A stretch of DNA of 64,000 nucleotides from Oikopleura dioica. Its lineage: Eukaryota; Animalia; Chordata. Positions within the stretch are counted from its first letter, which is position 1. Every line of letters starts with the position of its first letter. The position numbers were made by a program, and so were the translations under genes. Shown one piece after another: positions 16,491-53,852 of this stretch. The notes beneath the pieces were generated by a model, which worked only from the letters and a program-made list of their open reading frames with translations, was not told where the DNA came from and did no database searches. The stretch lies in NCBI GenBank assembly GCA_907165135.1, contig OU015568.1:15263208-15327207 (forward strand). The letters are read 5' to 3'.

Positions 16491-16797
16491 TGTTATGATA
16501 TAACTTATGTTTATGCAGCTGAGTGCCCAGGTTAGCCTGAGCATCTCGTTCCATCCTGACGATATGCCTCGTGCATAATTGATCAACCAATAAGAACCTG
16601 GATGGCTCGGGATGCAGCGTAGGATAGCCTGGGGGCTCAGCGATCAGTATATAAGGAAGACACCTTCCTTCAGATCAGTAACGTTCTCATTTCATACCAT
16701 GTGCAAGACATGAAATAAAACACAAAATACGTTATACCAAAATATGCGTTAGTTTTTATTGCAAGATTGATACACCATTGCAAGGCAGCGCATAACA
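16491..16797 (+). repeat. 5' LTR (307 bp)
   Basis: TGTTATG...CATAACA 7-bp terminal inverted repeat; direct repeat of 53546-53852 with no mismatch seen by eye. Confidence 0.97.
16587..16719 (+). promoter_or_regulatory. LTR promoter and polyadenylation signal
   Basis: CCAAT 16587-91, TATATAA 16648-54, Inr-like TCAGT 16675-79, AATAAA 16714-19; the same layout recurs in the 3' LTR. Confidence 0.7.
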
Positions 16798-16798
16798 T

Positions 16799-16811
16799 TG
16801 GTGTCAGAAGT
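16799..16811 (+). other. Primer binding site complementary to tRNA-Leu 3' end
   Basis: TGGTGTCAGAAGT 1 nt after the LTR; reverse complement of ACTTCTGACACCA, the 3' end of metazoan tRNA-Leu(CAA). Confidence 0.85.
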
Positions 16812-16899
16812 ATAAACAAACCCAGCGCCAGGTATGAATTTTAGGAAAATATTAAGAAAGGTAAAAATATTTATGAATCTTCACGCTGGTAGCTTAGAA

Positions 16900-17700
16900 G
16901 AAACATAACAATTCATCAAAACGCGGTAAGTCTTTGAAAAACCATCAAAATTTTATGATTTTCTAAAGTGAACCTGCGTGTAGGATTTCTTTATAATTCA
17001 TAAAAGCGGAAAAGAGACTCTAAAAATAATGAAAGCTAAATGAAAAATTTATAAACCCCCACACGTGTAAGCTCAGAATAAACATTTAAATTTATAAAAG
17101 CACTAGAAGTCTTTGAAACACCATCAAAATTTTATGATTTTCGAAAGCGAGCATGCCTGGGGGATTATTTATTATTCATCTAGATGCAAGCTAGAAACTC
17201 TGAAATAGGAATTAAAATTCATAGACTTGCAAGGCTTTTGAAATAATGAAACATGAGAAGGAATACGCGCTGCGAAAGTTCAAAAGAGACGTTAACTCAG
17301 TCTCTTCTCGAGCGGATACGCGCTAAGTCGTATTCATAATTCATCAAAAACTGAGCAAAACGTCTGAAGAAACAATTAGAATTCATTAACGGGCAGACTC
17401 AAAGAAGTTATGAAACTTTCAAAGGAATAAATAATTTGATACTTCAGAAGAAACTTATAATTCAGTCTCTTTGAGAACAACGATACCTGAAGGTTTATTC
17501 ATTATTCATAAAAACGCAGAGAAGAGACTCTGAAATGGATAATTCATATGAATAGACTGTTGATGTTCAAAGAAATAATGAAAATTCCAAAGGAAGAAAG
17601 AATCTCAAACTACAAAAGAATCTCTAATTTCGTCTCTTTCAGATCCAGCATGATGAGAATATTCTATTAAAGAAAAACCCGCGAAGCGCGGCGCGCCAAA
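16900..17700 (+). repeat. Degenerate ~150-190 bp direct repeats in the element 5' leader
   Basis: gtctttgaaa(a/c)accatcaaaattttatgatttt near 16930 and 17110; recurring (g)agactct(g/a)aa motifs. Confidence 0.55.
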
Positions 17701-18993
17701 AGCGCTCAGTAATTTATGATCTTCAAAGAGATCAAGCTTTTCGGAAAATTAAAAATTCAGGAGAAGCGCGAGACGGTGCGCTTAGATTTTACGAATAATT
17801 TCTGGAGCAACCAGGCTGTCAGAATATGAATAGTTAATAGAAAACACGTGGAAAAATGCTCTCAAAAATATCAATTATTAAAAGGATTCCTCAGAAGTTG
17901 AGCCTGAAGATACCGTTTAATATTCATGATTCCGCGAAAACGGAAAACGGAAATCCACTTTCGTCATTTCACAAAAACCCAGCTTGGGGAAGGCAGAAGA
18001 AAAAAGAAGAAGTGGAAGTGAAGAAACCAATGCTGGCGGAGAAATTGATGAATCTTTGCTTACCGATCGCCCCGTTTCTTTTTGTTACACATTTTGTAGC
18101 CTAGACTTAATAAGCCAGAGAAGTAAGAATCAATGTTTTTTAAAATCCTAAGAGAAAAAGGTTGGGAAAAAATCATTTTAGGAAAAGCCCGCAGAATAAC
18201 ACAAAACCGATTATCAAAAAGAATCAAGATCTTTATAGAAGAAAAATACGGTAGGAGAAAGGTGAAACCTTATTCAAATTTTCTGAGGCTCCCTTAATCA
18301 AAAAATTTTTTTGATCGTCTCTTTTGAAAAGGAAAACTCAAAAATATGCCTTATTTAAAAATAACTCAAGGGAAAGAAACGTTTTTCTACGTTCCCTTTA
18401 AACAGAAGGCTATTATTAGCGAAAAAGAGTCAATTTACGATGAACCCAATTAATTTCACCCATGCTTTAAAAAATTTTTAACCTTCCCCTCTTCGCCCGT
18501 CTTAATGAAAGTCTACACTTTATTGACAAGGAAAGAATTTTCACGCGAAAATACGTTTACCCCGTTTTAAGAGTTACAACACCGATTTTTTCATTTTTTC
18601 TGCGAAAGTTAAGGTACCTTCCGCTCATAATAAAGATCTGATTATTCGCCCAGTTTAAGATGAAATCTTAAATAATTTATGGCTAAAGATCACCTTTATT
18701 ATTTTTTCGACACAATTTTTCGCTCAGCCCACCAAAAATAATTGTTCTTGATCAAAGACACATTATTCCGAGACGTCTTTCAACGTTTCCGACACGATGG
18801 TGGAAGAAGCGAAAATGATTGACAGCGGAAGAACAAAAGGCACCGGAAAATCACAACGAATTTTTATTATTCTGAGCGGTGTGAGCCGCTTCGGAAAAAT
18901 TAAAAATTCAAAGAGGCCGGTGGCCAAGTTTTCATAATTAATGAAGTAACCAAGTTGCGTGACAATGTATTCTGAAGCCAATTAAAGTGTACA

Positions 18994-19326
18994 CTATAAA
19001 TACAGCACTGGGAGGTGGAAAAGGATAACGAAGAGCAAGATCATAAGTGTAGCTCTGAAAAAAAGTCGAAAAATAAACGGCAATTCTATCGTCAATTTAC
19101 AATCAAGGATGAAGAAGCAAGCAACGACCAAGCAAATAAACACGATAAACTCCTCTGCTAACAAAAATCGCATCAAAGCTACGCTGGTCCTAGATTCAGC
19201 GCTAGGCCCGAAGCAACTAGCGTGCCCCTTCCACCAATTGAATGGGTCAAAGTTAAGGTAGAGTAAAAATTTTATTTCGGGATGAAAAAGCGCATATGTC
19301 ATGGTCCAAAATATTTTTCTTCTCAC
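18994..19326 (-). CDS. Possible antisense hydrophobic (membrane) ORF inside the element
   Basis: 110-aa ORF with two hydrophobic segments; no homology recognised. Confidence 0.3.
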   Translation of the reverse strand: MRRKIFWTMTYALFHPEIKFLLYLNFDPFNWWKGHASCFGPSAESRTSVALMRFLLAEEFIVFICLVVACFFILDCKLTIELPFIFRLFFRATLMILLFVILFHLPVLYL

Positions 19327-20774
19327 TAATCATACAAATATTTTTGCGGATGACAGGTCAGGCTGGCCCACTTTTCCGACATTTTTCGGCACACCCGATT
19401 TCTTGCGCTTATCTGAAAGAAAAATTTGGCTGAGTATCTTAGGCTTTCAACCGACCCTTTGAGATTTTCGGAAAGTATTTTTATCTGCCCTTGAAATTAT
19501 AAAAAAGGGGCCTAAATTTTTCGGAAATTTCGATGTTCTGGCGGGGAAAAATCTTGAGTTAACTGACCATTATTTTTGTCACATTTCTTTCCTAGAAAAA
19601 GGCCGCTTCCGCTTTTTCTTATAATAGCGCGCCGCGTCAAAAGCGTAATTATGTATCGGCCCTATTATGATAATTCGATATTCTCGTAAAAAGAAACAAT
19701 TTCGAGTTAATTTCCCCTTCCCTATGTGCCCAAAGAACGGAAAATTATACGTTAATTTTGGTAACACCGACTCTTCGGAGGGAAAAATCATCGGTAAATA
19801 GAAGTCAATGTGGTCTTAAGCTTGCCCGATCCTTGTAGCAAATTTTGTTATAAGCAGCAAAATTGTTATAAGCGACCCCAAAAAGCAAGCTTAAAATTTT
19901 CGAAGGAAAGTCATGATTTTGATTCAGATTGTTTTTCTTGAAAATAAATAGAGGCTTACTAACAGACCCATCGGAAGTGACGAATTTTCTCCTCCCCTTC
20001 GTTATAAAACGTCTCTTTTAGAAATCTCAGAGGATTGATAATTCTCATATAAACCTAGGTTGACTTCATTAAAGCCAATTTTTCAATTTTTCACTAAGTG
20101 AAGCGTCTCTTTCGATGCCGAAATAGGGTTATTTAGGTCGTTAGAATATAGTTTGAGTTTAATTCTTTGAAGAAAATTTTTTTCTTAACAAAAATAAACG
20201 AATGTTTGCATGACAAACAACCTAGAATAATGAAAATAAAAAAAAAAGCCCCTCTTAATTGGAAATTCAAGCTACAGTATTAATTCAAGAGAAACATCAT
20301 GTTCGCCGGCTTTGATTTTTTGTCGATCAAACCCCTTCATTTTCTCATTGAGAATCATTAAATGACACTCTACCGACCGTCGTAAATCAATTTGTTCACA
20401 ACTGTTTATAATTAAAAGAACACGTGCGGAAATCTGCTTGGTAGCTTATAACAACGGCAAAGGCCAAGTAAAAGCTTAATTATTTTTTGAATTTTTAATT
20501 TTTATTACAACAAAAATGATTAAGACAGTAGAATTACGGTTGAAAGAAGGATAAGCGAAAGGAAAATAATTGCGTACAAGATCATCGAGGCGGAAAATTT
20601 TATGCACCAAATTCTACAAAATAATTTCAAAACGGGCGGTAAATTAGAAAAAGATAAAGTTTATTTTTTGGTTGATAAACATTTTAAGAAAAATAGAAGG
20701 AAACAAATTCTGGCGTCTAGAAAAAATTGTGCATCAGTCGAGAGCGGGAAATTCTGAAAAAAGGGGCGCAAAAA

Positions 20775-21517
20775 TTACGCAGACTCGAAACCGGAGTCAT
20801 AGGACTCTAAGAAAAACGCTGGTTCAAAGATAATTTGATGCAAGTTGTCGAAGACAAAATCCACAAACGGATTCGGGTGCGGGTCAACTTCCATCAGGTC
20901 GTCTTCTTCGGGCTGATTTGCTGCAGCAGATTCATCGTCTGTCTGCTCGTCTTCTTCTGAAGAATCGGGAGGGAGCGGAATAGAAGCAGCAGGCTTAATT
21001 TAAAAGTTATTTTACAAAATAACTAATAATATTTAATGATTAATCATAACAAACGAAAAAAAGAAAACACCGAAGTAAAACTTACAATTAGAGTCACTGG
21101 AACGTCGGCGAAGAAGTGAGCGGGAATACCATTAAAATCAAAAGTCGCGTAGCGGTTGAGGTATTTGTCAACTTCTGGCTTCATGGCAAGGGGAAGAGAC
21201 GAAAGGCGAAGCCAAATGGAACCGCGCCGTCTTTCGTAGACGTTTGCAAGAGTCCGTCCGAAATCGGGCTTGCTATTCTGGGAAGGAATTGCGAGCTGAA
21301 ACAGGCCGAAGAGCTGAAGATTCATCCCCAAGATGTGCTCGCTTCTCGAAATCTGTTTCACGTAGTGTCGATAAGTCGGGCAGTCTCTTTCAGATGAATC
21401 CAACTCGTTATAGCCACGGGAATCAAAAATGCAGGGCCGCTTGCGAGGCAGATCATCTCGGGAACCATACGAAATCGTAGGTCCGTCGTCTCTTTTACGT
21501 TTTAAAAAGCGGCGCAT
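20775..21517 (-). CDS. Antisense 2-exon element gene (216 aa): basic NLS, acidic tail, C-terminal DSGFES motif
   Basis: Exon 1 21517-21086; 92-bp intron GTAAGT...TTAAG (21085-20994); exon 2 20993-20775 stays in frame to TAA and ends YDSGFESA. Confidence 0.65.
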
Positions 21518-23039
21518 TTTTTTTTTGGGTTGCGAAAGAAACTTTTTATTTGATAAGAATCGTTTGTAATCTGTGGTAAAACGAACATCCCGTCGAGTTT
21601 TTACAGAAAGTTATTAAAAATGAATGCATTTAAAACAATAAAAGTTCCAAGAAAACGAACGAGGAATGATCAAAAGCGGCGCGCGCTTCAGAATTTTTTG
21701 GAACGCTAGAATAATCGCATCCCCCAGCCAGCGAACCTTCACATGATCAAACCATGATTCGATAATTGACACGTAAAATAGGGCGGCCAAAGCCTTTTAT
21801 TTGTTTGAATGATAAGGAAGAAGTATCGTAAAATTTAACGCACTCAGAATTTTTGAATTTTTAAAATCAAACTAAGGATAAAGTAGTCCTAAAGACAAAT
21901 TAAAGATATAAAAGAAACATCATTCAAAGTATAAATGCCTCTTTTGATAAGGTAAATGGAATACAATCTGTCTGGGAAAAAATTTTTTATTAACAATACC
22001 CTCCTTTAGACGAAGTTACCCCAAACTCACGTGAAAACTAAAAATCTATTGGATCATTTTAATTTCATTTTTAACCGAAATGAGCGTATTTAAAGAACCC
22101 AACAAAATTGTTTCTTTTGATGCAAGAAAGCGATAAGCGCGGAATTTCAAAAAGCCCAAAAGAATAACTTAATATCTTCCGAATAAGCAAATAATTAATG
22201 GATGCCCGTTATTGCCAGTTCTTAAAAACGTAACTGCGACTGCCAAGCGATTACGAGGATTTGCAGCGGCAAGTTGCCGTCGCCGCTGTTTTACCAGAAA
22301 GTTTCGAACTCCCGCCGCTAGAATTAATGCTTTTGTTAATAAGAAGAAGCGCCAAGAAGAGACTATATTTTTAGCAAGAATTACAAATGTCTGACAATTT
22401 TTATTGGAAACGGTGCTTATTTAAAGAAAGAAAATACTCTTCCAAAAATCCGCGCGCTTCGACCGAAAACTTCCTTGCCCACCATTTTGTCTTTCATCAG
22501 AAATTCTTCCTGATTATTTTCAAATAGAAGATTTAGAGTTTATAAAATTAAGCGCATTAGTAAATTGCCGGAAGAGACGGAATTTCCTAAATAACCAGTT
22601 ACAATTGATGGTACGGAAGGCGCAGGTGCAACCCGGGGATCGGCTGCAATCGAAGGTTTACTGTTATCATTTATTCAACAATCGCGGTCACGTGGCGAAC
22701 GCCAAACAGGTGTCAGATAAGGACAATAAATGAAAAGGGCAAGCGATTTATTGGACCCTCAGCAAACTGCTTTACCGAACAATTATCTCCCCTCTTACAA
22801 AATATCAAAGAAACCTCCGGGACTTCAACAAAAGAAGGTGCAATTTTTGTCGGGACATTCAACTTTGATCGGATTAAATCAAAACTGCCTACGATAGGGA
22901 TGTTCGAATAGCTCGCTTTACCTAGCGTAGCCTCATATAACTTAGAACGAGGACTTAAAAGGAACAATTATTAAAAATCATCGGCCTCGGACTTCGCTTT
23001 ATTGGAGAAGCGTCTAATATTAAAGTAGAAAAAGTCAGA

Positions 23040-24000
23040 ACTCATACCGAGTTTTTAAGATAAATTTTTGAAGTCAAACTAAGGTCAATAGAACTTATTA
23101 AAGGAGTTTATTTTATAAAAGAAACATTTATCTAGGTTTAAAGGTTTTTTCAAGATATAGACTTCAAACAAAGGCAAGGAAAACTTTAATTTTAATTTTG
23201 AGTTTTGTCATCCTTGACGGGAAAGCGACTATTTTTAAAGGCAAATCAAGTCTAAAAGGCTTGATTGACACGTTCAACACATAAAGTGAACGTTTCGATA
23301 ATCCAAAATGGTTCTTTCAAGAATTCGAACCCCGAAGAAAAAGCAGAGTAGAATTTTAAAATAAATTCTAGTTTTGTCGTTTTAGACGAGAAAGCCATTA
23401 TTTTTAAAATCAAACTACGCACCAGATAGCTCGTCTAACAAATTCAACAGGAGAAAGAAACGTTACCAGAAGGAAAAATGCTTCTTTCGAAAGAACAAAC
23501 TCTGAAGTAAAACAAGAAGGAATTTTTAAAATAAATTTAAATTTTTCAAAAACTCGATAGGGAAAATGTGATTTTTAAAGTCAAACTAAATTACATCGGT
23601 TTTGTTTAACAAGTTTATCATACAAAAGGAATGATATTATGACGATAAATGCTTCTTTTGAGATATTTACTCCGAAGAAGAAGCAGGGGAAATTTTAAAA
23701 TTCATTAAAGGTTTGTTCCCTTAAAATAGGAAATTTCTGATTTTTTGAACTCAAACTTAAGTCGAAACAATCTTGTTGACATATTTGAATCTTTAAAGAA
23801 ACAAGATCTGAATCATTGATGTCTATTTTCAGAAAATCGACATGGATAAGGCCAGGAGAGAATCATTAAATTCTGGTCTCTATTTAGTCTCTTCTTCGAT
23901 AATGCCTCTTCTGCGGCATATAAGGAAAGAAACAACAATTATTTTCAAAAAGGAACTCAAACTCGGATATACGGACAAATCAATTTTTATTCTCACAATG
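23040..24000 (+). repeat. Degenerate ~170-bp tandem repeat (5-6 units)
   Basis: Core tttt(a/g)aa(g/a/c)tcaaact recurs near 23073, 23240, 23409, 23580, 23750, 23956, each with an aattttaaaat(a/t) co-motif. Confidence 0.6.
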
Positions 24001-24116
24001 ATCGAATGGTTCTAAAAAGAAATATCTACAGTGATATTTTCAATTACAAGAGACAATTGACGAATGAATTACCAGAAATCAACGTTTCTTTACAGTAAAG
24101 AAAACCGCGAAAATTA

Positions 24117-24446
24117 CTAATAATAATGAAAATCGTCCTTTTTCGTTGATTTACGGACGCGGGTGGACCGGCGAAGCGGGGGCTGCACAGGATTTCGCGC
24201 AGCTGGTTGTGAGGCTGTTTCGGAAGCAGCTGGTTGCGTGGCCGGGCGTGCAATCGCCGACGTGGTAGTAGTAGTTGTCGTTGTCGAAGCCGAAATTCCC
24301 AATCGTCTTTCCCAAGGAAATGGCGGTAGAGTTTGGAATTTTCTCCAGCGACGCTCTGAGCGACGATCTAGCTTCTTGCAGAGCTTTTTCAGATCCAAGA
24401 TACGACGCATTCTCTTCGAAACTTTCTGATCAGGGCTAGTGACCAT
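24117..24446 (-). CDS. Antisense 109-aa basic protein ending RRSTRVRKSTKKDDFHYY
   Basis: GC-richer island in an AT-rich region; C-terminal motif shared with 25672-26175. Confidence 0.6.
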   Translation of the reverse strand: MVTSPDQKVSKRMRRILDLKKLCKKLDRRSERRWRKFQTLPPFPWERRLGISASTTTTTTTTSAIARPATQPAASETASQPAARNPVQPPLRRSTRVRKSTKKDDFHYY

Positions 24447-25042
24447 TTTTCGTAGGTGCTTCGAGACCTTTTGTCTCCTTTTCGAGCAAAAGCCTTCATT
24501 ATCAAAATGCAGTAAAAATCACGAAACTTAAATTGAACCAAATAAGTTCGAAGGATAATTTTTTCGAATCGTTGTCGATTATAAGTAGCGATAATCTTGC
24601 CCCACCACTCGTTACTGCCAGTATAAACGGCAACTAAAAACAGACTCGGGAAAAGGGCCAGCTGGCCAGGTAGCACGAACATGAAAGAAGTAGGAGCCTT
24701 CCGATTCATGTTAAAACCGCGGTAAATAAGAATACTCGCTGCGGGTTCGTGAAATTAGTGTTTAAAATTATAAGATCAAAAGAATCGTATTTCTAACATT
24801 TGGGAATTACACATTTTCCTCTAATGCTAGGTAAGCTTTATTCTAGCTTCCTCAAAGTAAATTCCTCTTCATAACCTTAAAAACACCCTCTAGAAAGAAA
24901 AAATTTTTATAATAATCAAACACTAAATCTTTTGATGAAAGAAAAGAGGCGAAAAAGACCAATAAAATTTGCTCATTTTCAAAGGAAACTTCCATTAAAT
25001 GAGAGGGTAAGGTTTTTTCTGTCAAAAAAAAATGAATATTTC

Positions 25043-25230
25043 CAAAGAAGATCTTTTCAGTTCACAAAAACGGCACTTTTTACAAAAGGAGAACTTCTCC
25101 CCTTCACAAAATCGGCATTTTTTGTAAAGGAGAACTTCTCCCCTTCACAAAATCGGCATTTTTTACAAAAGGAGAACTTCTCCCCTACACAAAATCAGCA
25201 TCTTTACCAAAGGAGAATTTCTCCCGTTCA
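25043..25230. repeat. 41-42 bp tandem array carrying palindrome GGAGAA(C/T)TTCTCC
   Basis: Palindrome starts at 25088, 25129, 25171, 25212, plus one degenerate unit upstream. Confidence 0.85.
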
Positions 25231-31519: not shown

Positions 31520-31742
31520 TCACCAGCCACCAAAGAAAGGAGATAGTTAAATAGGAATTAAACGCTGAAAAGAGACGCCACATGAGGATTAACCTGCTCA
31601 GGCTTAAAATAACAGATATCGAACTATTACAAGAAACCAAAAGAAGCTATTTTACTGAAAATATCATAACAAAAAAATGAAGGAAAGAACCTTCAAAACC
31701 CATTGGGCTCACACCAAAGAAATAATAATAACATCATTCAGG

Positions 31743-44953: not shown

Positions 44954-45487
44954 ATGCGGTACAGATGCGCTTATTGCAACACTCAATGGGCGTCCATAAA
45001 TTTCGAAGACGGCTGTAGAAATTGCAATAGCGATTTCATCGAAATAATCAATGATCGAGCCAGCACACGAGATTCAAATACAAACTGGACCACCCTGGGA
45101 CAAATCAAGTGGACTCTGACGATAGAGAAAAGGCACTGGGAGAAGCTTAAGTCCTTAAACACCGACCTGGTAAAGAGCAAACAGAAAAAATAGAGCGGCT
45201 TAATGAATCACGTATTTAAGATGATGCGATTCCGCATTCCGACGCCCTCCTCGCCCAAAGAGAAGCTAAGAACCGAAAAGGAAGGCGGTAAGGACTTTCC
45301 CGTGGACAAGCAACGCCAAAAGGAAGTGGACATCTGCGCAATATGCCAGGAAGGACTCTTCAACAACCTTGCTTGCCTACGTTGTAATCATGTTTTTCAT
45401 CAAGGTTGTATTCGCAAGTGGTTAAACCAACCACGCTGCTCGCGCTGTCCGTACTGCAACCAAACAGTCCCACTGCGTTTCTTCTAA
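44954..45487 (+). CDS. RNF126/RNF115-like E3 ligase A: Zn ribbon + RING-H2 (intron 45170-45220; 160 aa)
   Basis: YRCAYC...CRNCNSDFIEII (cf. CPRCESGFIEEL); CAIC...CNHVFHQGC..W...CPYC. A 51-bp GT-AG intron joins them in frame. Confidence 0.75.
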
Positions 45488-45546: not shown

Positions 45547-46104
45547 ATGGAACAGGCAAAAATTGACAATATTATCATTGGAACAGCGGAAGACGCGATC
45601 AAGCTTTCCTCCTTCCAAGAAATTATCGTACGAGAAATCCTGGGGAAACCGAAGTTGATTGGTTTCAATGCTGAAGAAGAATGGCAGCGTCCCCTGAGAG
45701 ACGCCGTTCATTTGGTAAACCAGAAAGCCGAACTATGGCTAAGATCCCAAACTTGGCAGGAACAAGCAACAATAGCGAAACTGCCGAGACAACGACTAGC
45801 GACAACAACTTTGTCTTCCACCAAGGACCTCGCACTGCTGATCGCATTCCGAACTATGCAAAGAAAGTTGAAAAGCCCTTGGCAAAAAGAAGGTTTTGAT
45901 CGCGCGATCATCAAAGAAATTGGGAGCATCAATGTTCAAGAACCAGCGGTCGCCAAGGAATTCGCTCGCGACGTAAACACGGGAATAGAATCGATTCCGG
46001 CAATCATCGAAGAGGCGTACACAAAAATAAAAAATGAAGAATCACTGGAAGATACCCGAAAAAAACCTGTTAAACCTGCATGTCTGACACTTTCCCAGCG
46101 ATAA
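45547..46104 (+). CDS. Element cargo family X, copy 2 (185 aa, intronless)
   Basis: IKLSSFQEIIVREILGKP / EEWQRPLRDAV / STKDLALLIAFRTMQR align with copy 1 (34337). Confidence 0.8.
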   Translation: MEQAKIDNIIIGTAEDAIKLSSFQEIIVREILGKPKLIGFNAEEEWQRPLRDAVHLVNQKAELWLRSQTWQEQATIAKLPRQRLATTTLSSTKDLALLIAFRTMQRKLKSPWQKEGFDRAIIKEIGSINVQEPAVAKEFARDVNTGIESIPAIIEEAYTKIKNEESLEDTRKKPVKPACLTLSQR

Positions 46105-46202
46105 GAGAAAAGCTGGATAATACTTCCCCGAACTCATTTCCTTCCGTCTTAAACAAGTCAACGTCTTTTAGAAAGCATTTGCTGACAAAAAGTAATTTAA
46201 GA

Positions 46203-46694
46203 ATGAAGCAAACCGGAGGAAATTACATCCTCTCCCTTGTCATGAATCAACCAACTGCAATGCCCAAAGAGGAGCTCGCCGCGAAGGGACTTGACCGTGG
46301 TAGAGCATTCGGGGAAGGATGCGGAGGAACTCAAGACAAATTCCTCGGTAGCAAAATTGGGATCGACGCTATGATAGAGGCAGTGAAGCAAACCCTCGAA
46401 GAATTGTCCGAGGGTCGAGACCTGCCTGCAGAACAAGGAGGACTTCTAATGGGAACCGCGATAGGCTTTATGAAAAGCCACGGTCACTCACCTCTTCACG
46501 AGGAAGGCTATCGAAAAATAGTGCAAGTCGTGTTTCCTCGATTGGCAAACGTACAAACACCGGCTTACTGGAGCCCTAAAACAATATTCGCACACCTGTA
46601 CTTCAATCTCATGATGAGACGACAGAAACTACCCAGACAGGGCGTAGGCGCGGAGCCACCGAAGGTAAGCTTGCAAGATGTGTCCCGAAATTAA
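46203..46694 (+). CDS. Element cargo, hypothetical 163 aa
   Basis: ATG after acceptor aatttaag. Confidence 0.6.
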   Translation: MKQTGGNYILSLVMNQPTAMPKEELAAKGLDRGRAFGEGCGGTQDKFLGSKIGIDAMIEAVKQTLEELSEGRDLPAEQGGLLMGTAIGFMKSHGHSPLHEEGYRKIVQVVFPRLANVQTPAYWSPKTIFAHLYFNLMMRRQKLPRQGVGAEPPKVSLQDVSRN

Positions 46695-46715
46695 ACAATC
46701 TAGAAAATCGCCCGA

Positions 46716-46901
46716 ATGGATCCGTCTGTAGCAATTCCGGGACCAACAACTCAGACAACACAAATTTTCCCCGGGCAACACACCACTCAAATCCAGCCGA
46801 CAACAAGGGAACAACCAATCCAGATGCCAACGGAGAATCTCATCGGAGACGGAAACGTAGACAAATTCTTCGAAACAGTCTTCCCACCTGCCTTTCAATA
46901 A
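46716..46901 (+). CDS. Small Pro/Thr/Gln-rich ORF (61 aa)
   Basis: Sense ORF filling the gap between cargo genes. Confidence 0.4.
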   Translation: MDPSVAIPGPTTQTTQIFPGQHTTQIQPTTREQPIQMPTENLIGDGNVDKFFETVFPPAFQ

Positions 46902-47038: not shown

Positions 47039-47700
47039 ATGAGCTCCCCAAGAGATTCGAACCTAGCTCCAAAAACCGAGCCGGAAATAAAGGTAAATAA
47101 ACAAAATGATAAGAGCTAATCTTCCCTAAGGAGGAATCCGTTCATCTCGAGCTACTCAAATCCTACAAGCACCTCCTTCCGAACCAAATCTACAATTATG
47201 CCAAACTTGTCGTTAAACGAGTAATGACAACTGACCCAAAGCTTTCCCCAAAAGGCATCGTGACCAGCGCAGTTTATTTGGCGTACAAATTTTCGCCAGA
47301 GCCAAAAACAACAACAGCCATCGGAGAAATGCTGAAATGCCCAAATTGGATGATTTACAAAACCGCACCGTTAGTACGGACACGATTCAACAAGGAGACC
47401 AAAAACGAGCTAGAGATTGCAAGAAAATACATCGATCAACAAGCTCATCTCGCTGATTCGGATTGGATCACTCGGGCAAGACAAATAGCCGACCATGCCT
47501 GGCACCCCAACATCAAAGCGAGCCCGAAAAGAATTGCTGCATCATCCGCGTACTTAGCATACAAATTTTCGCCAACACCAATGTCGGCGAGGAAAGTAGC
47601 ACAGCAATGGAACTTCTCCACAGCGCAAATTCTGGCAACAGCCCAAACCATTCAGAAGCATCTCAAAATAGTCTGTTTTATTACCGCCCGGCGGGAGTAG
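47039..47700 (+). CDS. TFIIB-core-like (two cyclin-fold repeats, no Zn ribbon); intron 47093-47130; 207 aa
   Basis: Repeats GIVTSAVYLAYKF and RIAASSAYLAYKF. A 38-bp intron (GTAAAT...gctaat...ccctaag) supplies an in-frame ATG exon. Confidence 0.7.
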
Positions 47701-47749
47701 ACTGCTTGAACAATCAGAGTTACCGATCTTAACCTGAACCCGATTTCAG

Positions 47750-48524
47750 ATGGCTAGCTTTCGCTGCTTAGGTTGTAACCTGAATTGCGAGGAGATTCGA
47801 AAACCCTGGAATTGCCCGAATTGCAACAGTAAGTTCATCGATCTAATAGGAAAATGGAAAAAAGAAGACGTGGTAGACAAGACCGGTTACAACAATGGAG
47901 AGATTCTCTTCAAAATCGTTGCAAACCACGAGAGGGCAATCAGCCAAATCAAACACTTGATGGAACTTAGTAACTGTCGAACCTCTGCACATGTAAGTGC
48001 CCTAGATGGTTGGGAAAAAGTAAAAAATTAATCAGGGTGAAACAAATGAAAACGCCCAAACACCGGGGCCTACTCCATCAACGGAACCACCGAAAGACCC
48101 AACAGGCAGAAAGACGTCCGGGCTTTTAGAAGAAAAGAACAGTTTCAAAAAGGCACCGACTTCTGTTAACCTTGAAGGACGGAATCAATTGAAAATGAGA
48201 CCACAGCCAAGGGTAGGAGAAATAGAAGGTATTCGGGGACAGTGCCAAGGAAGATACCTCATACCAAATGGGAAGCGTAGACATAAACAAAAAACAATTG
48301 AAGAAATTGGGACTCGCGAATATGAAAGACGCGAGGACACACTTCGACATTCCACCATGCATGAGACTCTTGAATACCCTTGCGGCATCTGCATGGAAGA
48401 ATTCGCGGCCAAGTGCTGTTCATTCCTCCCCTCGTGCGGGCACACTTTCCACACTCACTGCATCCTAAAATGGCTTCTCCACAAAAATACCTGTCCAATT
48501 TGCCAGGAAATCATAGCAAAATAA
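47750..48524 (+). CDS. RNF126/RNF115-like E3 ligase B: Zn ribbon + RING-H2 (intron 47993-48035; 243 aa)
   Basis: FRCLGC...CPNCNSKFIDLI; CGIC...CGHTFHTHC..W...CPIC. A 43-bp GTAAGT...CAG intron joins them in frame. Confidence 0.8.
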
Positions 48525-48576
48525 AATAATAATAAGAAAAAGATAACTCTGACACTCTTAACTTACCCTGTTAAGT

Positions 48577-49421
48577 ATGGACGAGAACCAAGAGGAAGCA
48601 GCACAAACTGAAAACGAAGAATCACCGCATAATTCAAGGCAGAAGGAACAAACACTGCCATGTTTCTTGGAAGAAATAATGACACCACCGAAGAAAATAG
48701 GGCGCCTAGAAGTAATCAACCCAGATGGAACAAGAACTTTGCAACAATTCGTTGAAGGAGGAGCCACGTGCGAGGAACTGCAAGCACTCTTAGACTCACT
48801 TTCACGCATTGAATTGACAGAATGGGAAAAAGAGGTAGGCGACCCCTGCCGCATTTGCCTGGAAGAATTTGACAAAACAGCAAACCTTATACCCACCTGT
48901 GGACACTTCTTTCACCAACATTGTCTACGAAACTGGCTCATATGGAAGGATTCTTGCCCACTATGCATCTTACCGGTAAACGAGAACAGATTGAACATGA
49001 CCCGAAAATACTTTAGGTTAAGCCGAAAGGAACCATCCCAATAACAATTAAGGATTGGCTGGAAAAGAAACATAAAGTTAAGTACGAATCGTTGCTCGAT
49101 GCGGTAAATATACTTGAAAAGAAGGAAGAATATGACAACATCAACTCACATTTCCGCCTCGAACCGGACGGATCGCTCATTGAAATAAAAATCATCTTCA
49201 GGAAAGTCGAAGGCGAAGAATTGGAGGAAAGGCTCATGCTGACAAAGAAAATCAAGATAAGCGCAGTAGAAAAGTACGAAAGTGATTGCGGGCTCTGCCA
49301 GGAAGACCTGCCTGAAGACATATCGGTCATGACATGCTGTTACGCCTACTACCATAATGCGTGCCTGCGAAAATGGCTAGCAAACAGACCTTACTGCAAG
49401 TACTGCAACACCCCCCTATAA
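48577..49421 (+). CDS. Tandem double-RING protein (intron 48976-49016; 267 aa)
   Basis: RING-H2 CRIC...CGHFFHQHC..W...CPLC and a second RING CGLC...CCYAYYHNAC..W...CKYC. A 41-bp GT-AG intron joins the ORFs in frame. Confidence 0.75.
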
Positions 49422-49481: not shown

Positions 49482-50351
49482 ATGATGTTTAGAATGCTCT
49501 CCACAAACACATTTCAGCTCTACGTATGGCTTCCTACCGAAAACATTTTTTTCGAGAACCATGTCTCGAGGAACCAACAAGGATTCCGGGACGCACGGAA
49601 AGCAGGGCTCTCCGACGAACAATTGACAAGTCTCTTTCTCATAACACTGACACCAGAACAAAGGAGTTACGAGACTCTCCTCGACGAAATTGAGAAAACA
49701 AATTTTGATCTATGCGTAGATCGGATGAGGAAGATTCTTACCACGAACCTGGTATACGATCGAGACTTGCCATACCTCGACGCCAAGGAAAAATTCCGGC
49801 TCTATGTATGGGGACCAAACGAAAAAATCAGCTTCGCACAACATGTGGCAAGAAACAGACAAGGGTTCAACAGCGCAAGAAAATGTGGGCTTCTAGATGT
49901 TGATCTCACTCGTCTTTTGTTTATGACTCTCAGACCAGAGTTTGCACACCTCGAGAAAGGCCTAAATAGGAATGAAAAAACCAAACTCGAGCTTTGCATC
50001 GAGAGAATGAAGAAATGTATTTCAGCGAAACATCAAAACCATAATAAGGGGAATGAAGTAAACGGAAAACGCAAAGAAGGCGAAGCCCTGATCATTTTCT
50101 TCGGACGACTCTGCGCAGATCTGCAAAAGTCACCTGGCGAAGAACCACTATCAGACGCCGCGGCCCTCAGAATAATTTACCCTATTCTCCTACAGAACTG
50201 TGGCCCTGCCGAGTTCCATACCCTTGTCAAATATAAGAGCAGCGACGGAACCCAAGATTTAACCTTCAGAGCGCTTGCAGCTAAACTAGGGAACCTGCAC
50301 GTACCCTACGGTGGCATACAAACAAGACCAAGACGCGCTATTAATCGCTAG
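49482..50351 (+). CDS. Capsid paralog 2 with tandem-duplicated CA N-terminal module (289 aa)
   Basis: FQLYVW..ENI.F..HV.RN.QGF..ARK.GL.D..LT.L...TL.PE occurs twice and matches Gag FQLKNWKTEENITYWEHLTRN...GLTDSQMVSLFMLTLRPE; then RKEGEALIIFFGRL. Confidence 0.85.
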   Translation: MMFRMLSTNTFQLYVWLPTENIFFENHVSRNQQGFRDARKAGLSDEQLTSLFLITLTPEQRSYETLLDEIEKTNFDLCVDRMRKILTTNLVYDRDLPYLDAKEKFRLYVWGPNEKISFAQHVARNRQGFNSARKCGLLDVDLTRLLFMTLRPEFAHLEKGLNRNEKTKLELCIERMKKCISAKHQNHNKGNEVNGKRKEGEALIIFFGRLCADLQKSPGEEPLSDAAALRIIYPILLQNCGPAEFHTLVKYKSSDGTQDLTFRALAAKLGNLHVPYGGIQTRPRRAINR

Positions 50352-50444: not shown

Positions 50445-50657
50445 ATGCATCTCGCTCCGCAATTCTGGCATAAATGGCTCTCGTGCCTTTGCCTAGCAAC
50501 ACCAGCTGACCCGACGATTGAGGGAAGGGAGCAGGTGACCCGGAGAGTTCCTCTCCGCGACAAGATCAAACGAAAACTAGGGATAAGTAAAACCCAGAAT
50601 CGGGAGGCCCCCGAAGAAGAAATCTTGATCCCATCTGCACCTACCCGAACTCCATAA
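50445..50657 (+). CDS. Small cargo ORF (70 aa) with PSAP motif near C-terminus
   Basis: ATG after acceptor acattcag; ends LIPSAPTRTP. Confidence 0.45.
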   Translation: MHLAPQFWHKWLSCLCLATPADPTIEGREQVTRRVPLRDKIKRKLGISKTQNREAPEEEILIPSAPTRTP

Positions 50658-51712: not shown

Positions 51713-52622
51713 ATGTCTGCTCCAGGCTGCTCTCTTCCCGCCTTTACCTGCTCATATCATGGCCCAAAGCACATAGCCGACGAAAGGCTTGTGACAGGAG
51801 ACCTTATCTGCAAAATATGCGGACTTGTCGTAGGAGAAAGATGCCCACCACTCAACCCAGAAAAATCAATGCGAGTGACGGCCATCAAACCAAACGAAAA
51901 CTTGCCAAAAACTTTCACCCGGAATAACGAAGAAACAGGGGACGAATGCATCATATCAAACGAGGCCCAACTATCCAACCGCGAGAAAAATAGGTTACAA
52001 ACTGTCCTTCGGGAATGTGAAGACCTCATCGAAGAAGCAGGAGCCCGATTGATATACTCAGGACTCACTAATACAAAACTACGAGCTTACGAACTCATCA
52101 AAAAGCTATACCTCAAAGAAAAACAGGGAACAACTTGGTACTTCCACCGCCAAAATCGCGCAGAACCCGTGGCAATAGCGGCGTGCCTCTACCTGGCCAG
52201 TAAGCAAGAGAACTGCGACCTGAGCTTGGAAGAAATCTGCCAGGCAACTGGCACCTCTCCCCCTAATCACCCAGAGAATGATTCGCAAATTCGATACCTT
52301 CCTCAGAACAGCAAAAATCGACGCACACATTAAAAACAGAATCAAACCTTACATCCAAAGAATAGCAGCTGCGCTTCGATTAACTAATCACCAAGCGAAA
52401 GAAATCGAAGCGCATGCCATCCTGATAAGCAAAGAAACCCCATCAGCCACAACCTCAGCAAAAACGCTCGCCGCCGCCAGCACCTACGTATATATCGACC
52501 GAATAAACCGACCAAAGTCAGTCAAGGAAATAGCAAGACTTGTGAACGCGGGAACCCGGCGGCTTCAAATCTACATCGCAGAACTCCCTCGAACACTCGG
52601 AGGAAGAAGAGAAAGGGAATAG
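51713..52622 (+). CDS. TFIIB homolog (Zn ribbon + core), split by a 1-nt frameshift in a C-run near 52258
   Basis: CSYH...GDLICKICGLVVGER Zn ribbon; AIAACLYLAS...SLEEI and TLAAASTYV...KSVKEIA cyclin repeats. Deleting one C joins the two ORFs. Confidence 0.88.
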
Positions 52623-52858
52623 AAGGAAAAGGTGATTACTATATAAACGCGATGGCGCTACAAAACCAACACTAACCAATTACGTAGTTAATCCCGCTCG
52701 ATCCTGACAAACAACAACTTAAACACCCAGAATATAGTAGCTGCCACCCATTTATGTCTGTACCCATTATTTCGAACTTCAAACAAAATCTTTATGCCTT
52801 ATGAATAGCGCTCACTCCTTTAAAATAGGCCACTTTCATCCAACATCCGATTTTTAGT

Positions 52859-53479
52859 ATGTCAATCCTTAAAGAAATCCAAACGATCCAAGCCGCGTCA
52901 AACCGACGAATTGTAAAAACGCTGCTCCTCCCAAGAATGGTCGGAATCGAAATACCCATTGGAACCATGACCCTTCGTGATGAGCAGCCCGTCCAAGCCA
53001 TGTACGATTTTATCGATAAAGTCACCGCTTCCGCCATCACCTACCGGTCCATCCCGAACTTAAACTCTGACGCTTTCCTGGACGCCTTTCTGAATCAAAT
53101 CCCAAGACAAGAAACCGAGCAATGCGTTCTACTTTGGATCGCAAAAACCATCATCGTCGCCCATATGACCTTCCATGAAACCAGAGACCGACTGATCGCA
53201 TACCTCACGGATGCTTTCCAAACCAAGTATGGTCGACGTCAGATCCCATTTCGACCAATAGCATTGCCAAGAAACGAACTCCAAGACAAACTCCAAGCGA
53301 TCGAAATCCGCGTTAAAGCGGTCGCTTCTACTATCATCCTCGCCAAACGCGTGGTCAAACCCGGCTTGCCAAAAATGGAGCCAACTCCGGCTAGAAAAGG
53401 GACCAGACAACGAATGCGAAAAATCCAACGTAACAGACGAAAGTGGTCGGCATCGAGCACCAAATCCAATGAGGCTTAA
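52859..53479 (+). CDS. Last cargo gene (206 aa): candidate Rev/Rex-like RNA export adaptor (NES + Arg-rich motif)
   Basis: ELQDKLQAIEI fits the CRM1 NES spacing phi-x3-phi-x2-phi-x-phi; RKGTRQRMRKIQRNRRKW resembles the lentiviral Rev ARM. The function is inferred. Confidence 0.55.
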   Translation: MSILKEIQTIQAASNRRIVKTLLLPRMVGIEIPIGTMTLRDEQPVQAMYDFIDKVTASAITYRSIPNLNSDAFLDAFLNQIPRQETEQCVLLWIAKTIIVAHMTFHETRDRLIAYLTDAFQTKYGRRQIPFRPIALPRNELQDKLQAIEIRVKAVASTIILAKRVVKPGLPKMEPTPARKGTRQRMRKIQRNRRKWSASSTKSNEA

Positions 53480-53532
53480 CCAGTTAAAAATTTACTGTAC
53501 TTCTTTTCCTGTCTCTCTCTTCCAGATTCCCT

Positions 53533-53545
53533 AAGGAGGGTAAAG
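53533..53545 (+). other. Polypurine tract
   Basis: AAGGAGGGTAAAG directly abutting the 3' LTR. Confidence 0.8.
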
Positions 53546-53852
53546 TGTTATGATATAACTTATGTTTATGCAGCTGAGTGCCCAGGTTAGCCTGAGCATC
53601 TCGTTCCATCCTGACGATATGCCTCGTGCATAATTGATCAACCAATAAGAACCTGGATGGCTCGGGATGCAGCGTAGGATAGCCTGGGGGCTCAGCGATC
53701 AGTATATAAGGAAGACACCTTCCTTCAGATCAGTAACGTTCTCATTTCATACCATGTGCAAGACATGAAATAAAACACAAAATACGTTATACCAAAATAT
53801 GCGTTAGTTTTTATTGCAAGATTGATACACCATTGCAAGGCAGCGCATAACA
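53546..53852 (+). repeat. 3' LTR (307 bp)
   Basis: Direct repeat of 16491-16797; followed by TSD CCGT. Confidence 0.97.

What the first reader, a model, noticed from the sequence alone, without database searches (positions are those of the whole stretch)
16491..53852. A 37.4-kb, apparently intact and recent LTR retroelement with a virus-like accessory genome
All cis features of one retroelement are present: matching LTRs, CCGT TSD, tRNA-Leu PBS, PPT and uninterrupted gag and pol. Yet it is several times longer than typical gypsy elements and the known Oikopleura Tor elements, and comparable to the largest known LTR elements such as planarian Burro (>30 kb). gag-pol sits mid-element with ~30 cargo ORFs on both sides, including captured host regulators (connexin, TFIIB x2, Cks1, Rab1, UBL, RING E3s). 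Capsid paralogs lie on both sides of gag-pol, which argues that the cargo evolved with the element and is not a nested insertion. I do not know of a described retroelement with this gene set.
Basis: partly seen in the sequence, partly recalled or inferred. Interest (0 to 1): 0.97.

Follow-up and report, generated by a model that had tools for sequence, protein, structure and literature searches.

The report
Giant 37-kb gene-rich LTR retroelement
The tiny genome of the plankton animal Oikopleura dioica holds two nearly identical copies of a 37.4-kb retrovirus-like mobile element that carries, besides the usual gag and pol genes, about 32 extra genes, which makes it far larger and more gene-rich than any LTR retroelement I could find described.

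Summary
Window 16491-53852 is bounded by 307-bp LTRs (TG..CA) that are 100% identical, with a 4-bp duplication (CCGT), a primer-binding-like site, a purine tract, and open gag and pol with intact catalytic motifs.

The decisive new result is a second full-length copy on another chromosome of the same assembly (O. dioica OKI2018_I69). It differs by 24 substitutions in 37.4 kb. It stops exactly at the LTR ends and has a different 4-bp duplication (AGAG). So the whole 37.4 kb, cargo included, moved as one LTR/integrase-type unit.

The right 24 kb holds about 34 same-strand ORFs, far above shuffle expectation. They include:
- a CKS protein
- a connexin
- five RING proteins
- a TFIIB-like gene
- a Rab-like fragment
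- two gag-derived paralogs, one on each side of gag-pol

The cargo shares gag-pol's A-rich strand bias, and two post-pol genes recur in a 68%-identical relative. No close host donor was found for CKS or connexin.

The left 12.6 kb is non-coding, with an unexplained repeat module. No UBL or env gene was found. The tRNA-Leu assignment could not be tested.

Relatives with 31-42% pol identity are ordinary in size (7-11 kb). I found no published description of such an element.

The parts
16487..16490 (+). Left target-site duplication, CCGT
   Evidence: the same 4 bases occur at 53853-53856. Copy 2 has AGAG on both sides instead.
16491..16797 (+). 5' LTR, 307 bp, TG..CA. It has a CCAAT box at 16587-16591, a TATA-like TATATAAGG at 16648-16656 and AATAAA at 16714-16719.
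   Evidence: 100% identity to the 3' LTR; sequence; AATAAA position. The promoter and poly(A) roles are inferred from position.
16799..16810 (+). Primer-binding-like site TGGTGTCAGAAG, one base after the LTR
   Evidence: Its first 8 bases are shared with the post-LTR site of the 7.4-kb relative L011. The tRNA identity was not testable.
16830..16837 (+). Splice-donor-like AG|GTATGA in the leader (candidate major donor; inferred only)
   Evidence: Read. No RNA evidence.
16798..29400 (+). ORF-poor 12.6-kb region. GC is 0.37. It holds at least 11 copies of a three-box repeat module (TTTTAAAGTCAAACTA ... AAAAGAAAC ... AAATGNTTCTTT) at 21859-29363, plus local degenerate tandem duplications.
   Evidence: ORFs at chance level. 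The core TCAAACTA occurs 13 times against 2.8 expected. Alignments; no consensus RNA fold. No Rfam, tRNA or Pfam hits. The region is present in copy 2.
29666..29911 (+). Rab/Ras-like fragment, 81 aa, without a P-loop
   Evidence: Pfam Ras, E 1.3e-5, covering only profile positions 13-55. Translation.
29977..30405 (+). Orphan ORF, 142 aa
   Evidence: no family.
30761..31519 (+). gag-derived paralog, 252 aa (the putative capsid part of gag)
   Evidence: 47% identity to gag residues 302-477; alignment A3.
31677..31985 (+). CKS (cyclin-dependent kinase regulatory subunit) homolog, 102 aa
   Evidence: Pfam CKS, E 1.9e-26. The best true relatives are 46-58% identical and come from diverse eukaryotes.
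32128..32601 (+). Small membrane protein, 157 aa, with two N-terminal hydrophobic segments
   Evidence: An acceptor-like motif lies just before its ATG.
32673..33017 (+). Orphan ORF, 114 aa
33337..34116 (+). Orphan acidic ORF, 259 aa. A 229-aa version is annotated in both copies.
   Evidence: The AF2 model was unusable.
34337..34696 (+). Orphan ORF, 119 aa; paralog of ORF 45547-46104
   Evidence: 39% identity over 106 aa.
34815..35126 (+). Orphan ORF, 103 aa
35207..37057 (+). gag, 616 aa, with one CCHC zinc knuckle
   Evidence: 38% identical to the gag of relative L003.
36579..40607 (+). pol open frame, 1342 codons, in the order PR-RT-RNase H-IN. It overlaps gag by 479 nt in the +1 frame.
   Evidence: Pfam RVT_1 1.5e-29, RNase H 2.4e-20, rve 2.1e-11. 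Weak aspartyl-protease hits. Motifs DTG, YLDD, HHCC and DD35E.
40745..40987 (+). Orphan ORF, 80 aa
41014..41385 (+). Small single-pass membrane protein, 123 aa, conserved in relatives L003/L005
   Evidence: 28% identity to the syntenic ORF of L003/L005.
41361..41546 (+). RING finger ORF, 61 aa, conserved in L003/L005
   Evidence: Pfam zf-C3HC4, E 1.2e-8. tblastx gives 53% identity over 32 aa.
41650..42321 (+). Orphan ORF, 223 aa; its N-terminus matches the syntenic ORF of L003/L005
42822..44047 (+). Three orphan ORFs: 121 aa; 169 aa (acidic, identical in both copies); and 71 aa (one hydrophobic segment)
44137..44919 (+). Orphan ORF, 260 aa (annotated in the source assembly as protein P0003)
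   Evidence: The AF2 model was unusable.
44954..45193 (+). Small Cys-rich ORF, 79 aa. Its N-terminus resembles that of ORF 47750-48031 (zinc-ribbon-like, weak).
45203..45487 (+). RING finger ORF, 94 aa
   Evidence: Pfam zf-RING_2, E 6.5e-8.
45547..46901 (+). Three orphan ORFs of 185, 204 and 61 aa. The first is the paralog of ORF 34337-34696.
47224..48031 (+). A 158-aa ORF with a weak TFIIB-repeat match, followed by a 93-aa Cys-rich ORF
   Evidence: Pfam TFIIB, E 0.0047, below the cut-off. No support from PDB..
48189..49421 (+). Three RING-H2 finger ORFs: 48189-48524, 48577-49044 and 49092-49421
   Evidence: Pfam zf-RING_2, E 8.3e-12, 2.7e-12 and 6.9e-7. They are related to one another.
49482..50351 (+). 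gag-derived paralog, 289 aa, with two tandem copies of the putative capsid segment
   Evidence: 30% and 42% identity to gag residues 294-470; alignment A3.
50445..50657 (+). Orphan ORF, 70 aa
50704..51675 (+). Connexin homolog, 323 aa
   Evidence: Pfam Connexin, E 2.6e-18. Cx43 and Cx32 structures, E about 1e-13, over the N-terminal helix, TM1, E1 and TM2. Hydrophobic segments.
51713..52622 (+). TFIIB-like gene: zinc ribbon plus cyclin repeats. In the window copy it is read in two frames (one frame change).
   Evidence: Human TFIIB structures, E 7.5e-7, covering the ribbon and part of repeat 1. The downstream frame gives a weak TFIIB-repeat hit. It cannot be told here whether this is an intron, a long-read error or a real break.
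52859..53479 (+). Orphan basic ORF, 206 aa; the last gene before the purine tract
   Evidence: The source annotation fuses it with the host cyclin gene across the LTR.
53533..53545 (+). Purine tract AAGGAGGGTAAAG abutting the 3' LTR
53546..53852 (+). 3' LTR
53853..53856 (+). Right target-site duplication, CCGT

Best explanation
This is one giant, recently mobile Ty3/gypsy-type (Tor-like) LTR retroelement, or endogenous retrovirus-like element, of Oikopleura dioica.

Shown:
- The complete 37.4-kb unit, from LTR to LTR, has inserted at two or more chromosomal sites.
- Each insertion has its own 4-bp target duplication.
- This is the signature of integrase-mediated insertion of a reverse-transcribed copy.

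Inferred life cycle:
- Transcription starts at the TATA-bearing 5' LTR and ends at the AATAAA of the 3' LTR, giving an RNA of about 37 kb.
- A tRNA primes minus-strand synthesis at the site just after the LTR.
- The purine tract primes the plus strand.
- The element's own PR, RT, RNase H and IN, together with gag, do the rest.

The cargo, about 32 extra ORFs, is resident rather than freshly captured.
- It has the same A-rich coding strand as gag-pol.
- It includes duplicated gag pieces on both sides of gag-pol.
- It is partly conserved in a divergent relative.

Inferred expression. The many short same-strand genes would be expressed the way the host expresses its own operons or a complex retrovirus expresses accessory genes: by 3'-end formation at intergenic AATAAA signals, and by splicing (from a leader donor, or spliced-leader trans-splicing) onto acceptor-like sites placed directly before the start codons.

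Inferred cargo function. The cargo would reprogramme the host cell in the element's favour:
- the cell cycle, through CKS;
- RNA polymerase II initiation, through the TFIIB-like protein;
- ubiquitin-dependent turnover, through five RING proteins;
- cell-cell coupling, through the connexin.

The role of the 12.6-kb non-coding left region is unknown.
For: Boundaries: LTRs, TSD, PBS-like site and purine tract.

Second full-length copy:
- It has exact LTR-to-LTR limits, a different TSD (AGAG) and different flanks on another chromosome.
- It differs by only 24 substitutions in 37.4 kb.
- There is no internal LTR pair.

Core genes:
- pol domains and catalytic motifs are intact.
- gag has a CCHC knuckle.

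Cargo is coding and resident:
- ORF counts of 9 and 15 against 0.4 and 1.2 in shuffles.
- gag paralogs on both sides, and an ORF pair 34337/45547 straddling gag-pol.
- A>T skew of +0.25 to +0.26 in both cargo blocks, +0.24 in gag-pol and +0.02 to +0.06 in host flanks.
- The membrane-protein and RING ORFs after pol are conserved in L003/L005, whose pol is 68-72% identical.
- CKS has no relative above about 58% identity among 1.8 billion representatives.
- Connexin has no word-level homolog at all.

Expression signals:
- AATAAA is 5-fold enriched in the spacers (p = 4e-5).
- YTYAG lies within 4 nt of the ATG at 9 of 34 ORF starts, against 2.6% of other ATGs.
- The host resolves operons with a single spliced leader (PMC7986045).
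- Tor elements use splicing or internal promoters for env (PMC4402516).
Against: - There is no RNA, protein or particle evidence of any kind.
- The acceptor-motif test was designed after looking at the data, and it covers only about a quarter of the ORFs.
- About 20 ORFs are orphans with no homolog or usable structure model.
- The Rab-like ORF is a fragment, and the TFIIB-like gene is read in two frames, so some cargo may be decaying.
- No env-like gene was found.
- Internal poly(A) signals would work against production of a full-length 37-kb RNA.
- Only two copies are known.
- In copy 2, 16 of the 34 ORFs lose their frame. These are mostly 1-nt homopolymer differences that may be Nanopore consensus errors (PMC8008620).
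- Membership in the Tor clade was not tested phylogenetically.
Confidence: 0.85

Rival explanations
1. The cargo is passive. On this reading the element is a chimera in which an ordinary gag-pol element picked up host or foreign sequence by read-through or template switching. It carries that sequence as non-functional ballast, and the ORFs are decaying.
For: - Most ORFs are orphans.
- The Rab-like ORF is a fragment without a P-loop.
- The TFIIB-like gene is in two frames.
- A third of the element is non-coding.
- Relatives at 31-42% pol identity are ordinary in size, 7-11 kb.
Against: - ORF density is 10-20 times the shuffle expectation, and all the ORFs lie on one strand.
- gag paralogs and other paralog pairs straddle gag-pol.
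- Strand composition is shared with gag-pol.
- Genes after pol are conserved in a relative whose gag is only 38% identical.
- Signals are non-randomly placed around the ORFs.
- CKS, connexin and the RING ORFs keep full domain matches.
Confidence: 0.1
2. The second copy arose by DNA-level duplication or translocation of a composite locus, or by an assembly artefact, and not by retrotransposition of a 37-kb RNA.
For: - Only two copies are known.
- The assembly is Nanopore-based and scaffolded with Hi-C (PMC8008620).
- A 37-kb RNA intermediate is longer than that of any described LTR element (PMC6431247).
Against: - Similarity ends exactly at the first and last base of the LTRs in both copies.
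- Each copy has its own perfect 4-bp duplication (CCGT, AGAG).
- The flanks are unrelated.
- A segmental duplication or a misassembly would not produce any of these features.
Confidence: 0.03

Closest known systems
Tor elements of Oikopleura dioica (Ty3/gypsy-related, some with env; Volff 2004; Henriet 2015, PMC4402516)
   Same: - Same host.
- LTR element with gag and pol in the order RT-RNase H-IN.
- TSD of 4 bases (Tor: 4 or 5).
- Near-identical LTRs and copies, pointing to recent activity.
- Extra genes downstream of pol, expressed in Tor by splicing or from internal promoters.
   Different: - Tor elements are described as gag-pol with at most one further ORF (env).
- This element has about 32 extra ORFs on both sides of gag-pol, no recognisable env, and a 12.6-kb non-coding region.
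- It is 37.4 kb long.
- Whether its RT falls inside the Tor clade was not tested, because no Tor reference sequence could be brought in.
Burro (GYPSM1) giant gypsy-like elements of planarians (PMC6431247)
   Same: A giant LTR element of the gypsy type, with extra domains that touch ubiquitination and cell fate (RING-related, BIR, BCL2-like, MATH).
   Different: - Burro packs its extras into one polyprotein of about 4,900 aa and has an env-like region.
- Its internal region reaches 25 kb.
- It is present in thousands of copies.
- Here the internal region is 36.7 kb, the extras are about 32 separate small genes, the LTRs are only 307 bp, and two copies are known.
Complex retroviruses and fish foamy-like endogenous retroviruses with accessory ORFs (up to 17 kb; PMC6431247)
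   Same: Accessory genes beside gag-pol, an A-rich coding strand, and a leader with a donor-like site and acceptor-like sites before the downstream ORFs.
   Different: - Those have a handful of accessory genes, an env, and genomes of 17 kb or less.
- This element has no env candidate and twice that length.
- Its pol is gypsy-like rather than retroviral by its best hits.
Terminons (giant Penelope-like retroelements of bdelloid rotifers, up to 40 kb; PMC6431247)
   Same: A retroelement of comparable length with many accessory ORFs.
   Different: Terminons belong to a different RT class, have no LTRs or integrase, attach to telomeres, and carry a different gene set.
Polydnavirus vinnexins (virus-borne gap-junction genes; PMC8402728)
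   Same: A mobile or viral genome that carries a homolog of the host's gap-junction protein family.
   Different: Vinnexins are innexins in dsDNA viruses of wasps. Here the gene is a chordate-type connexin in a retroelement, and its function is untested.

Membership tests
LTR retrotransposon, Ty3/gypsy type (Metaviridae-like) | Direct LTRs with TG..CA termini flanked by a short target-site duplication | tested here: met
   307-bp LTRs, 100% identical. TSD is CCGT in the window copy and AGAG in copy 2.
LTR retrotransposon, Ty3/gypsy type (Metaviridae-like) | PBS next to the 5' LTR and a polypurine tract next to the 3' LTR | tested here: met
   TGG-initiated 12-mer one base after the LTR, and a 13-nt purine tract abutting the 3' LTR. 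The matching tRNA was not identified.
LTR retrotransposon, Ty3/gypsy type (Metaviridae-like) | pol domain order PR-RT-RNase H-IN with catalytic motifs | tested here: met
   Pfam domains in that order. Motifs DTG, YLDD, HHCC and DD35E. The PR match is weak (E about 0.1).
LTR retrotransposon, Ty3/gypsy type (Metaviridae-like) | gag with a capsid domain and a CCHC knuckle | tested here: inconclusive
   A CCHC knuckle is present. The presumed capsid segment matches no Pfam family or solved structure, so 'capsid' rests on its position within gag.
Tor elements (Oikopleura) | RT/IN clusters within the Tor clade in a phylogeny | not testable with these tools
   No Tor reference sequences could be fetched. 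The nearest hits are unnamed marine-metagenome contigs at 35-76% identity, and generic gypsy elements at 31% or less.
Tor elements (Oikopleura) | Host O. dioica; TSD of 4-5 bp; near-identical LTRs | tested here: met
   Source assembly GCA_907165135.1. 4-bp TSD. Criteria taken from PMC4402516.
Tor elements (Oikopleura) | Gene content of gag, pol and at most a third ORF (env) | tested here: not met
   About 32 further ORFs and no env-like ORF.
Retroviridae-like endogenous retrovirus | An env gene encoding a large membrane fusion glycoprotein | tested here: not met
   The largest non-gag/pol ORF is the 323-aa connexin. The only other membrane ORFs are 71-157 aa. There are no env family hits.
Connexin family | Match to the connexin domain, including TM1, extracellular loop 1 and TM2 | tested here: met
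   Pfam, 67 bits against a cut-off of 31.3. Cx43 structures, E 1.8e-13. The second half, including extracellular loop 2, is not matched.
CKS family | Full-length match to the CKS domain | tested here: met
   Profile positions 1-67 of 68, 92 bits against a cut-off of 27.
TFIIB family | Zinc ribbon followed by two cyclin-fold repeats in one protein | tested here: inconclusive
   The ribbon and part of repeat 1 match human TFIIB (E 7.5e-7). The second repeat is seen only weakly, and in a different overlapping frame. All Pfam scores are below the cut-offs.

The most novel reading that the evidence does not exclude
The element is the provirus of a genuinely complex reverse-transcribing virus with a genome of about 37 kb. 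That would be three times larger than any retrovirus and close to the size ceiling of RNA genomes.

On this reading it has adopted its host's operon logic (intergenic poly(A) signals plus splice or trans-splice acceptors) to express some 30 genes from one provirus. Its own CKS, TFIIB-like factor, RING ligases, extra capsid-like proteins and a connexin would then take over the cell cycle, transcription, protein turnover and cell-to-cell coupling, possibly helping it reach the germline without a classical env.
Probability: 0.25. Interest if true: 0.95.

Novelty: new variant of a known kind. Interest (0 to 1): 0.88.

Why it matters
The working size limit for LTR retroelements and retroviruses is set by three things: transcription of a full-length RNA, RT processivity, and packaging (review PMC6431247). 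The record internal region is about 25 kb, in Burro.

A unit with a 36.7-kb internal region that demonstrably inserted twice as a whole pushes that limit by half. It does so in the smallest, most streamlined free-living animal genome known.

Three further points would interest specialists.
- It would be the most gene-rich retroelement described, with a gene set reminiscent of large DNA viruses: cell-cycle, transcription, ubiquitin and junction proteins.
- As far as I could find, it would include the first connexin carried by a mobile or virus-like element.
- It offers a natural test of whether a retroelement can exploit operon-type RNA processing to become polygenic.

It also shows that the source annotation misreads the region. 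pol and the connexin are unannotated, and the last cargo gene is fused to a host cyclin gene.

Tried and rejected
**Searches that found nothing**
- Nested insertion: no second LTR pair or other long direct repeat lies inside the element. Copy 2 carries everything.
- Known RNAs in the left region: no Rfam or tRNA hit.
- Structured RNA in the repeat module: RNAalifold found no consensus pairs.
- Coding potential in the left region:
  - ORF statistics are at chance level.
  - A codon-usage scan did not discriminate even on the training region.
  - The ATG in box 3 of the module opens only 6-19 codons.
- TTTAGAC as a shared motif: not enriched.
- Relatives in IMG/VR for pol, gag, connexin and ORF 44137: none.
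- Connexin homologs by word search: none.
- The presumed capsid profile against PDB: nothing.
- Literature on giant Oikopleura retroelements or retroelement connexins: nothing found.

**Attempts that gave weak or unusable results**
- AF2 single-sequence models of ORFs 33337 and 44137 had pLDDT of about 40. They were unusable, so no fold search was run.
- PDB sequence searches of five orphans and of the second TFIIB-like candidate gave nothing significant.
- UBL: no ubiquitin-family hit in any ORF scanned.
- Link between the host RING gene next to the 3' LTR and the cargo RINGs: only generic RING-level similarity.

**Not testable**
- tRNA identity of the PBS: no tRNA gene occurs in the window or in any fetched locus.

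Full report
**1. Observation**

The window comes from Oikopleura dioica assembly OKI2018_I69 (GCA_907165135.1). The record is OU015568.1, and window position 1 corresponds to about 15,263,208.

Two 307-bp direct repeats lie at 16491-16797 and 53546-53852.
- They are 100% identical and have TG..CA termini.
- CCGT flanks both sides.
- TGGTGTCAGAAG follows the 5' LTR after one base.
- A 13-nt purine tract abuts the 3' LTR.
- The LTR holds CCAAT, TATATAAGG and AATAAA in the expected order.

The element is 37,362 bp long, with an internal region of 36,748 bp.

**2. Core genes**

- gag (35207-37057, 616 aa) has one CCHC knuckle.
- The pol frame (36579-40607) is open for 1342 codons.
- pol overlaps gag by 479 nt in the +1 frame.
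- pol carries RVT_1, two RNase H models, an integrase zinc domain and rve.
- It gives weak aspartyl-protease hits where PR is expected.
- The motifs DTG, YLDD, HHCC and DD35E are present.

**3. The decisive test: a second copy**

Two annotated cargo proteins led to a locus on OU015566.1. I walked along it with proteins that are identical in both copies. Four overlapping pieces (L010, L008, L006, L001) were kept apart and each compared with the window.
- Together they match window 16491-53852 at 99.6-99.8% identity.
- The match stops exactly at the outer LTR bases.
- The flanks are unrelated, and AGAG is duplicated on both sides.

Copy 2 lies at about 3,697,268-3,734,644 on the minus strand and is 37,377 bp long.

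Differences between the two copies:
- 24 substitutions.
- 97 gap columns, of which 81 lie in homopolymer runs of 3 or more.

The assembly is Nanopore/Canu, polished with Racon and Pilon (PMC8008620). Most of the indels may therefore be consensus errors in a repeat that short reads cannot polish. This is inference.

Taken at face value, 16 of the 34 ORFs in copy 2 lose their frame through differences of 1-2 nt. pol has 7 gap columns. One further ORF keeps its length but has 2 premature stops. Seventeen ORFs are intact, 16 of them with unchanged protein.

The result excludes a nested insertion, local host genes and misassembly. The whole unit inserted at least twice, by an integrase-type event.

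**4. Anatomy of the cargo**

The region from 29.7 to 53.5 kb is 83% covered by about 34 plus-strand ORFs.
- The upstream block has 9 ORFs of at least 100 aa, against 0.4 in dinucleotide shuffles.
- The downstream block has 15, against 1.2.

| Gene | Window coordinates | Evidence |
|---|---|---|
| CKS | 31677-31985 | Pfam E 1.9e-26 |
| Connexin | 50704-51675 | Pfam E 2.6e-18; Cx43 structures E 1.8e-13 |
| RING fingers (five) | 41361-41546, 45203-45487, 48189-48524, 48577-49044, 49092-49421 | |
| TFIIB-like | 51713-52622 | (human TFIIB, E 7.5e-7); |
| Weak TFIIB-repeat candidate | 47224-47700 |; not supported |
| Rab-like fragment (81 aa, no P-loop) | 29666-29911 | |

For the TFIIB-like gene:
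- The zinc ribbon and first cyclin repeat match human TFIIB.
- The second repeat is seen weakly in an overlapping frame.
- That makes one frame change in this copy.

Three small membrane proteins are present. No env-like ORF and no UBL were found.

Paralogy:
- ORF 30761-31519 is 47% identical to gag residues 302-477.
- ORF 49482-50351 holds two tandem copies of the same gag segment.
- ORFs 34337-34696 and 45547-46104 are paralogs that lie on either side of gag-pol.

That gag segment matches no known capsid family or structure. 'Capsid' is therefore an inference from its position within gag.

About 20 ORFs are orphans. Single-sequence AF2 models were unusable.

**5. Is the cargo resident?**

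A>T skew:

| Region | A>T skew |
|---|---|
| Upstream cargo | +0.26 |
| gag-pol | +0.24 |
| Downstream cargo | +0.25 |
| Host flanks | +0.06 and +0.02 |

Other results point the same way.
- The closest relative is L003/L005, one element seen in two marine metagenomes. Its pol is 68-72% identical and its gag 38% identical.
- After pol, that relative has syntenic homologs of the membrane ORF 41014-41385, the RING ORF 41361-41546 and the start of ORF 41650-42321.
- CKS has no relative above about 58% identity among 1.84 billion representatives. Its best hits come from nematodes, plants and unnamed contigs.
- The connexin shares too few words with any protein for the word-indexed search to score a hit.

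So the cellular-type genes are old residents or fast-evolving, and not recent captures.

**6. Relatives are ordinary in size**

Searching with the RT-IN region gave three tiers of relatives:
- two close relatives at 75-76% identity;
- a tier at 35-42% identity on marine contigs;
- generic gypsy elements at 31% or less.

Among the more distant relatives examined (31-36% identity over pol by blastp):
- L011 is a complete 7.4-kb element with 245-bp LTRs. The site after its LTR starts TGGTGTCA, like the one here.
- L012-L014 are about 10-11 kb, with gag, pol and three or four further ORFs.

The giant form is therefore derived within a lineage of normal-sized elements.

**7. The left 12.6 kb (16798-29400)**

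- GC is 0.37 and the A>T skew is +0.12.
- ORFs are at chance level.
- There are no Pfam, Rfam or tRNA hits.
- The region is present in copy 2.
- It carries at least 11 plus-strand copies of a module with three conserved boxes.
- RNAalifold finds no shared fold for the module.
- The ATG in the third box opens only 6-19 codons.
- There are also three local degenerate tandem duplications.

I cannot explain this region. It may hold cis-regulatory repeats, decayed gene starts, or simply a very long intron or leader. A donor-like AG|GTATGA sits 35 nt after the LTR.

**8. Expression model (inferred)**

- AATAAA is five-fold denser in the spacers than inside the ORFs (p = 4e-5), and 12 of the 30 spacers have one.
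- YTYAG ends within 4 nt of the ATG at 9 of 34 ORF starts, against 2.6% of other ATGs. This test was post hoc.
- Eleven of the 30 spacers are 60 nt or shorter. That is the distance used to call host operons, and the host resolves those with one spliced leader (PMC7986045).
- Tor elements express env by splicing from the LTR transcript or from internal promoters (PMC4402516).

The arrangement fits operon-like or complex-retrovirus-like processing. Only RNA data can tell.

**9. Comparison and novelty**

- Burro reaches 25 kb internally and more than 30 kb in total, with its extras in one polyprotein.
- Ogre owes its size to long LTRs.
- Fish foamy-like ERVs reach 17 kb.
- Terminons reach 40 kb but are Penelope-like (all from PMC6431247).
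- Polydnavirus vinnexins are the nearest precedent for a virus-borne gap-junction gene (PMC8402728).

Six literature searches found no description of a giant Oikopleura retroelement or of a retroelement connexin. The assembly paper reports Tor elements only in bulk (PMC8008620).

I rate the element as a new variant of a known kind, at the extreme of size and gene content.

Later I did the same with a stretch of a cellular Rab protein. None of these is viral. The tRNA-Leu assignment is reported as untested for that reason.

The copy-2 pieces were kept and compared apart. Only counts of differences are given.

Noticed in passing
window 52859-55600 (L002 18801-20783): The source annotation has a 775-aa gene model that starts inside the last cargo ORF. 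It runs across the 3' LTR and continues into the host RING and cyclin exons. pol and the connexin have no gene model at all. The element misleads automatic annotation.
   Followed up: partly
window 54013-54216 and 54298-54735: Directly after the 3' LTR the host sequence encodes two RING-like segments, followed by a cyclin (Cyclin_N, E 2.7e-30, at 55272-55616). Similarity to the cargo RINGs is only generic (28-35% identity), so no link could be shown.
   Followed up: partly
window 37094-37816, minus strand: A 240-aa ATG ORF lies antisense to pol, and there are several other antisense ORFs of 100-200 aa. They are probably a by-product of the T-poor plus strand, which gives few stop codons on the opposite strand. 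Not examined further.
   Followed up: no
window 21044-21517 and 25672-26175, minus strand: Two antisense ORFs (157 and 167 aa) lie in the otherwise non-coding left region. They are annotated as genes in both copies but have no family hit, and it is unclear whether they are real.
   Followed up: partly
window 16410-16445: A short, very GC-rich stretch (GGCGGGGCGCTGGGCGAGCGAGGCGCCGCGCGCCG) lies about 45 nt upstream of the insertion site. This is unusual for the surrounding host sequence.
   Followed up: no
window 1-16400: The host genes upstream of the element are ordinary: a p53-like DNA-binding domain, glucosidase II beta, a cytosolic carboxypeptidase and a cyclophilin.
   Followed up: yes
L012 1-42 and 11187-11228: The 11.2-kb metagenome contig of a 36%-identical relative has identical ends. 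That fits either a circular or tandem assembly, or an LTR collapse.
   Followed up: no
window 62721-63097: Three copies of a repeat of about 63 nt containing GGTCGCGCTGCGTCTC lie in the host flank far from the element. They are unrelated to the finding.
   Followed up: no
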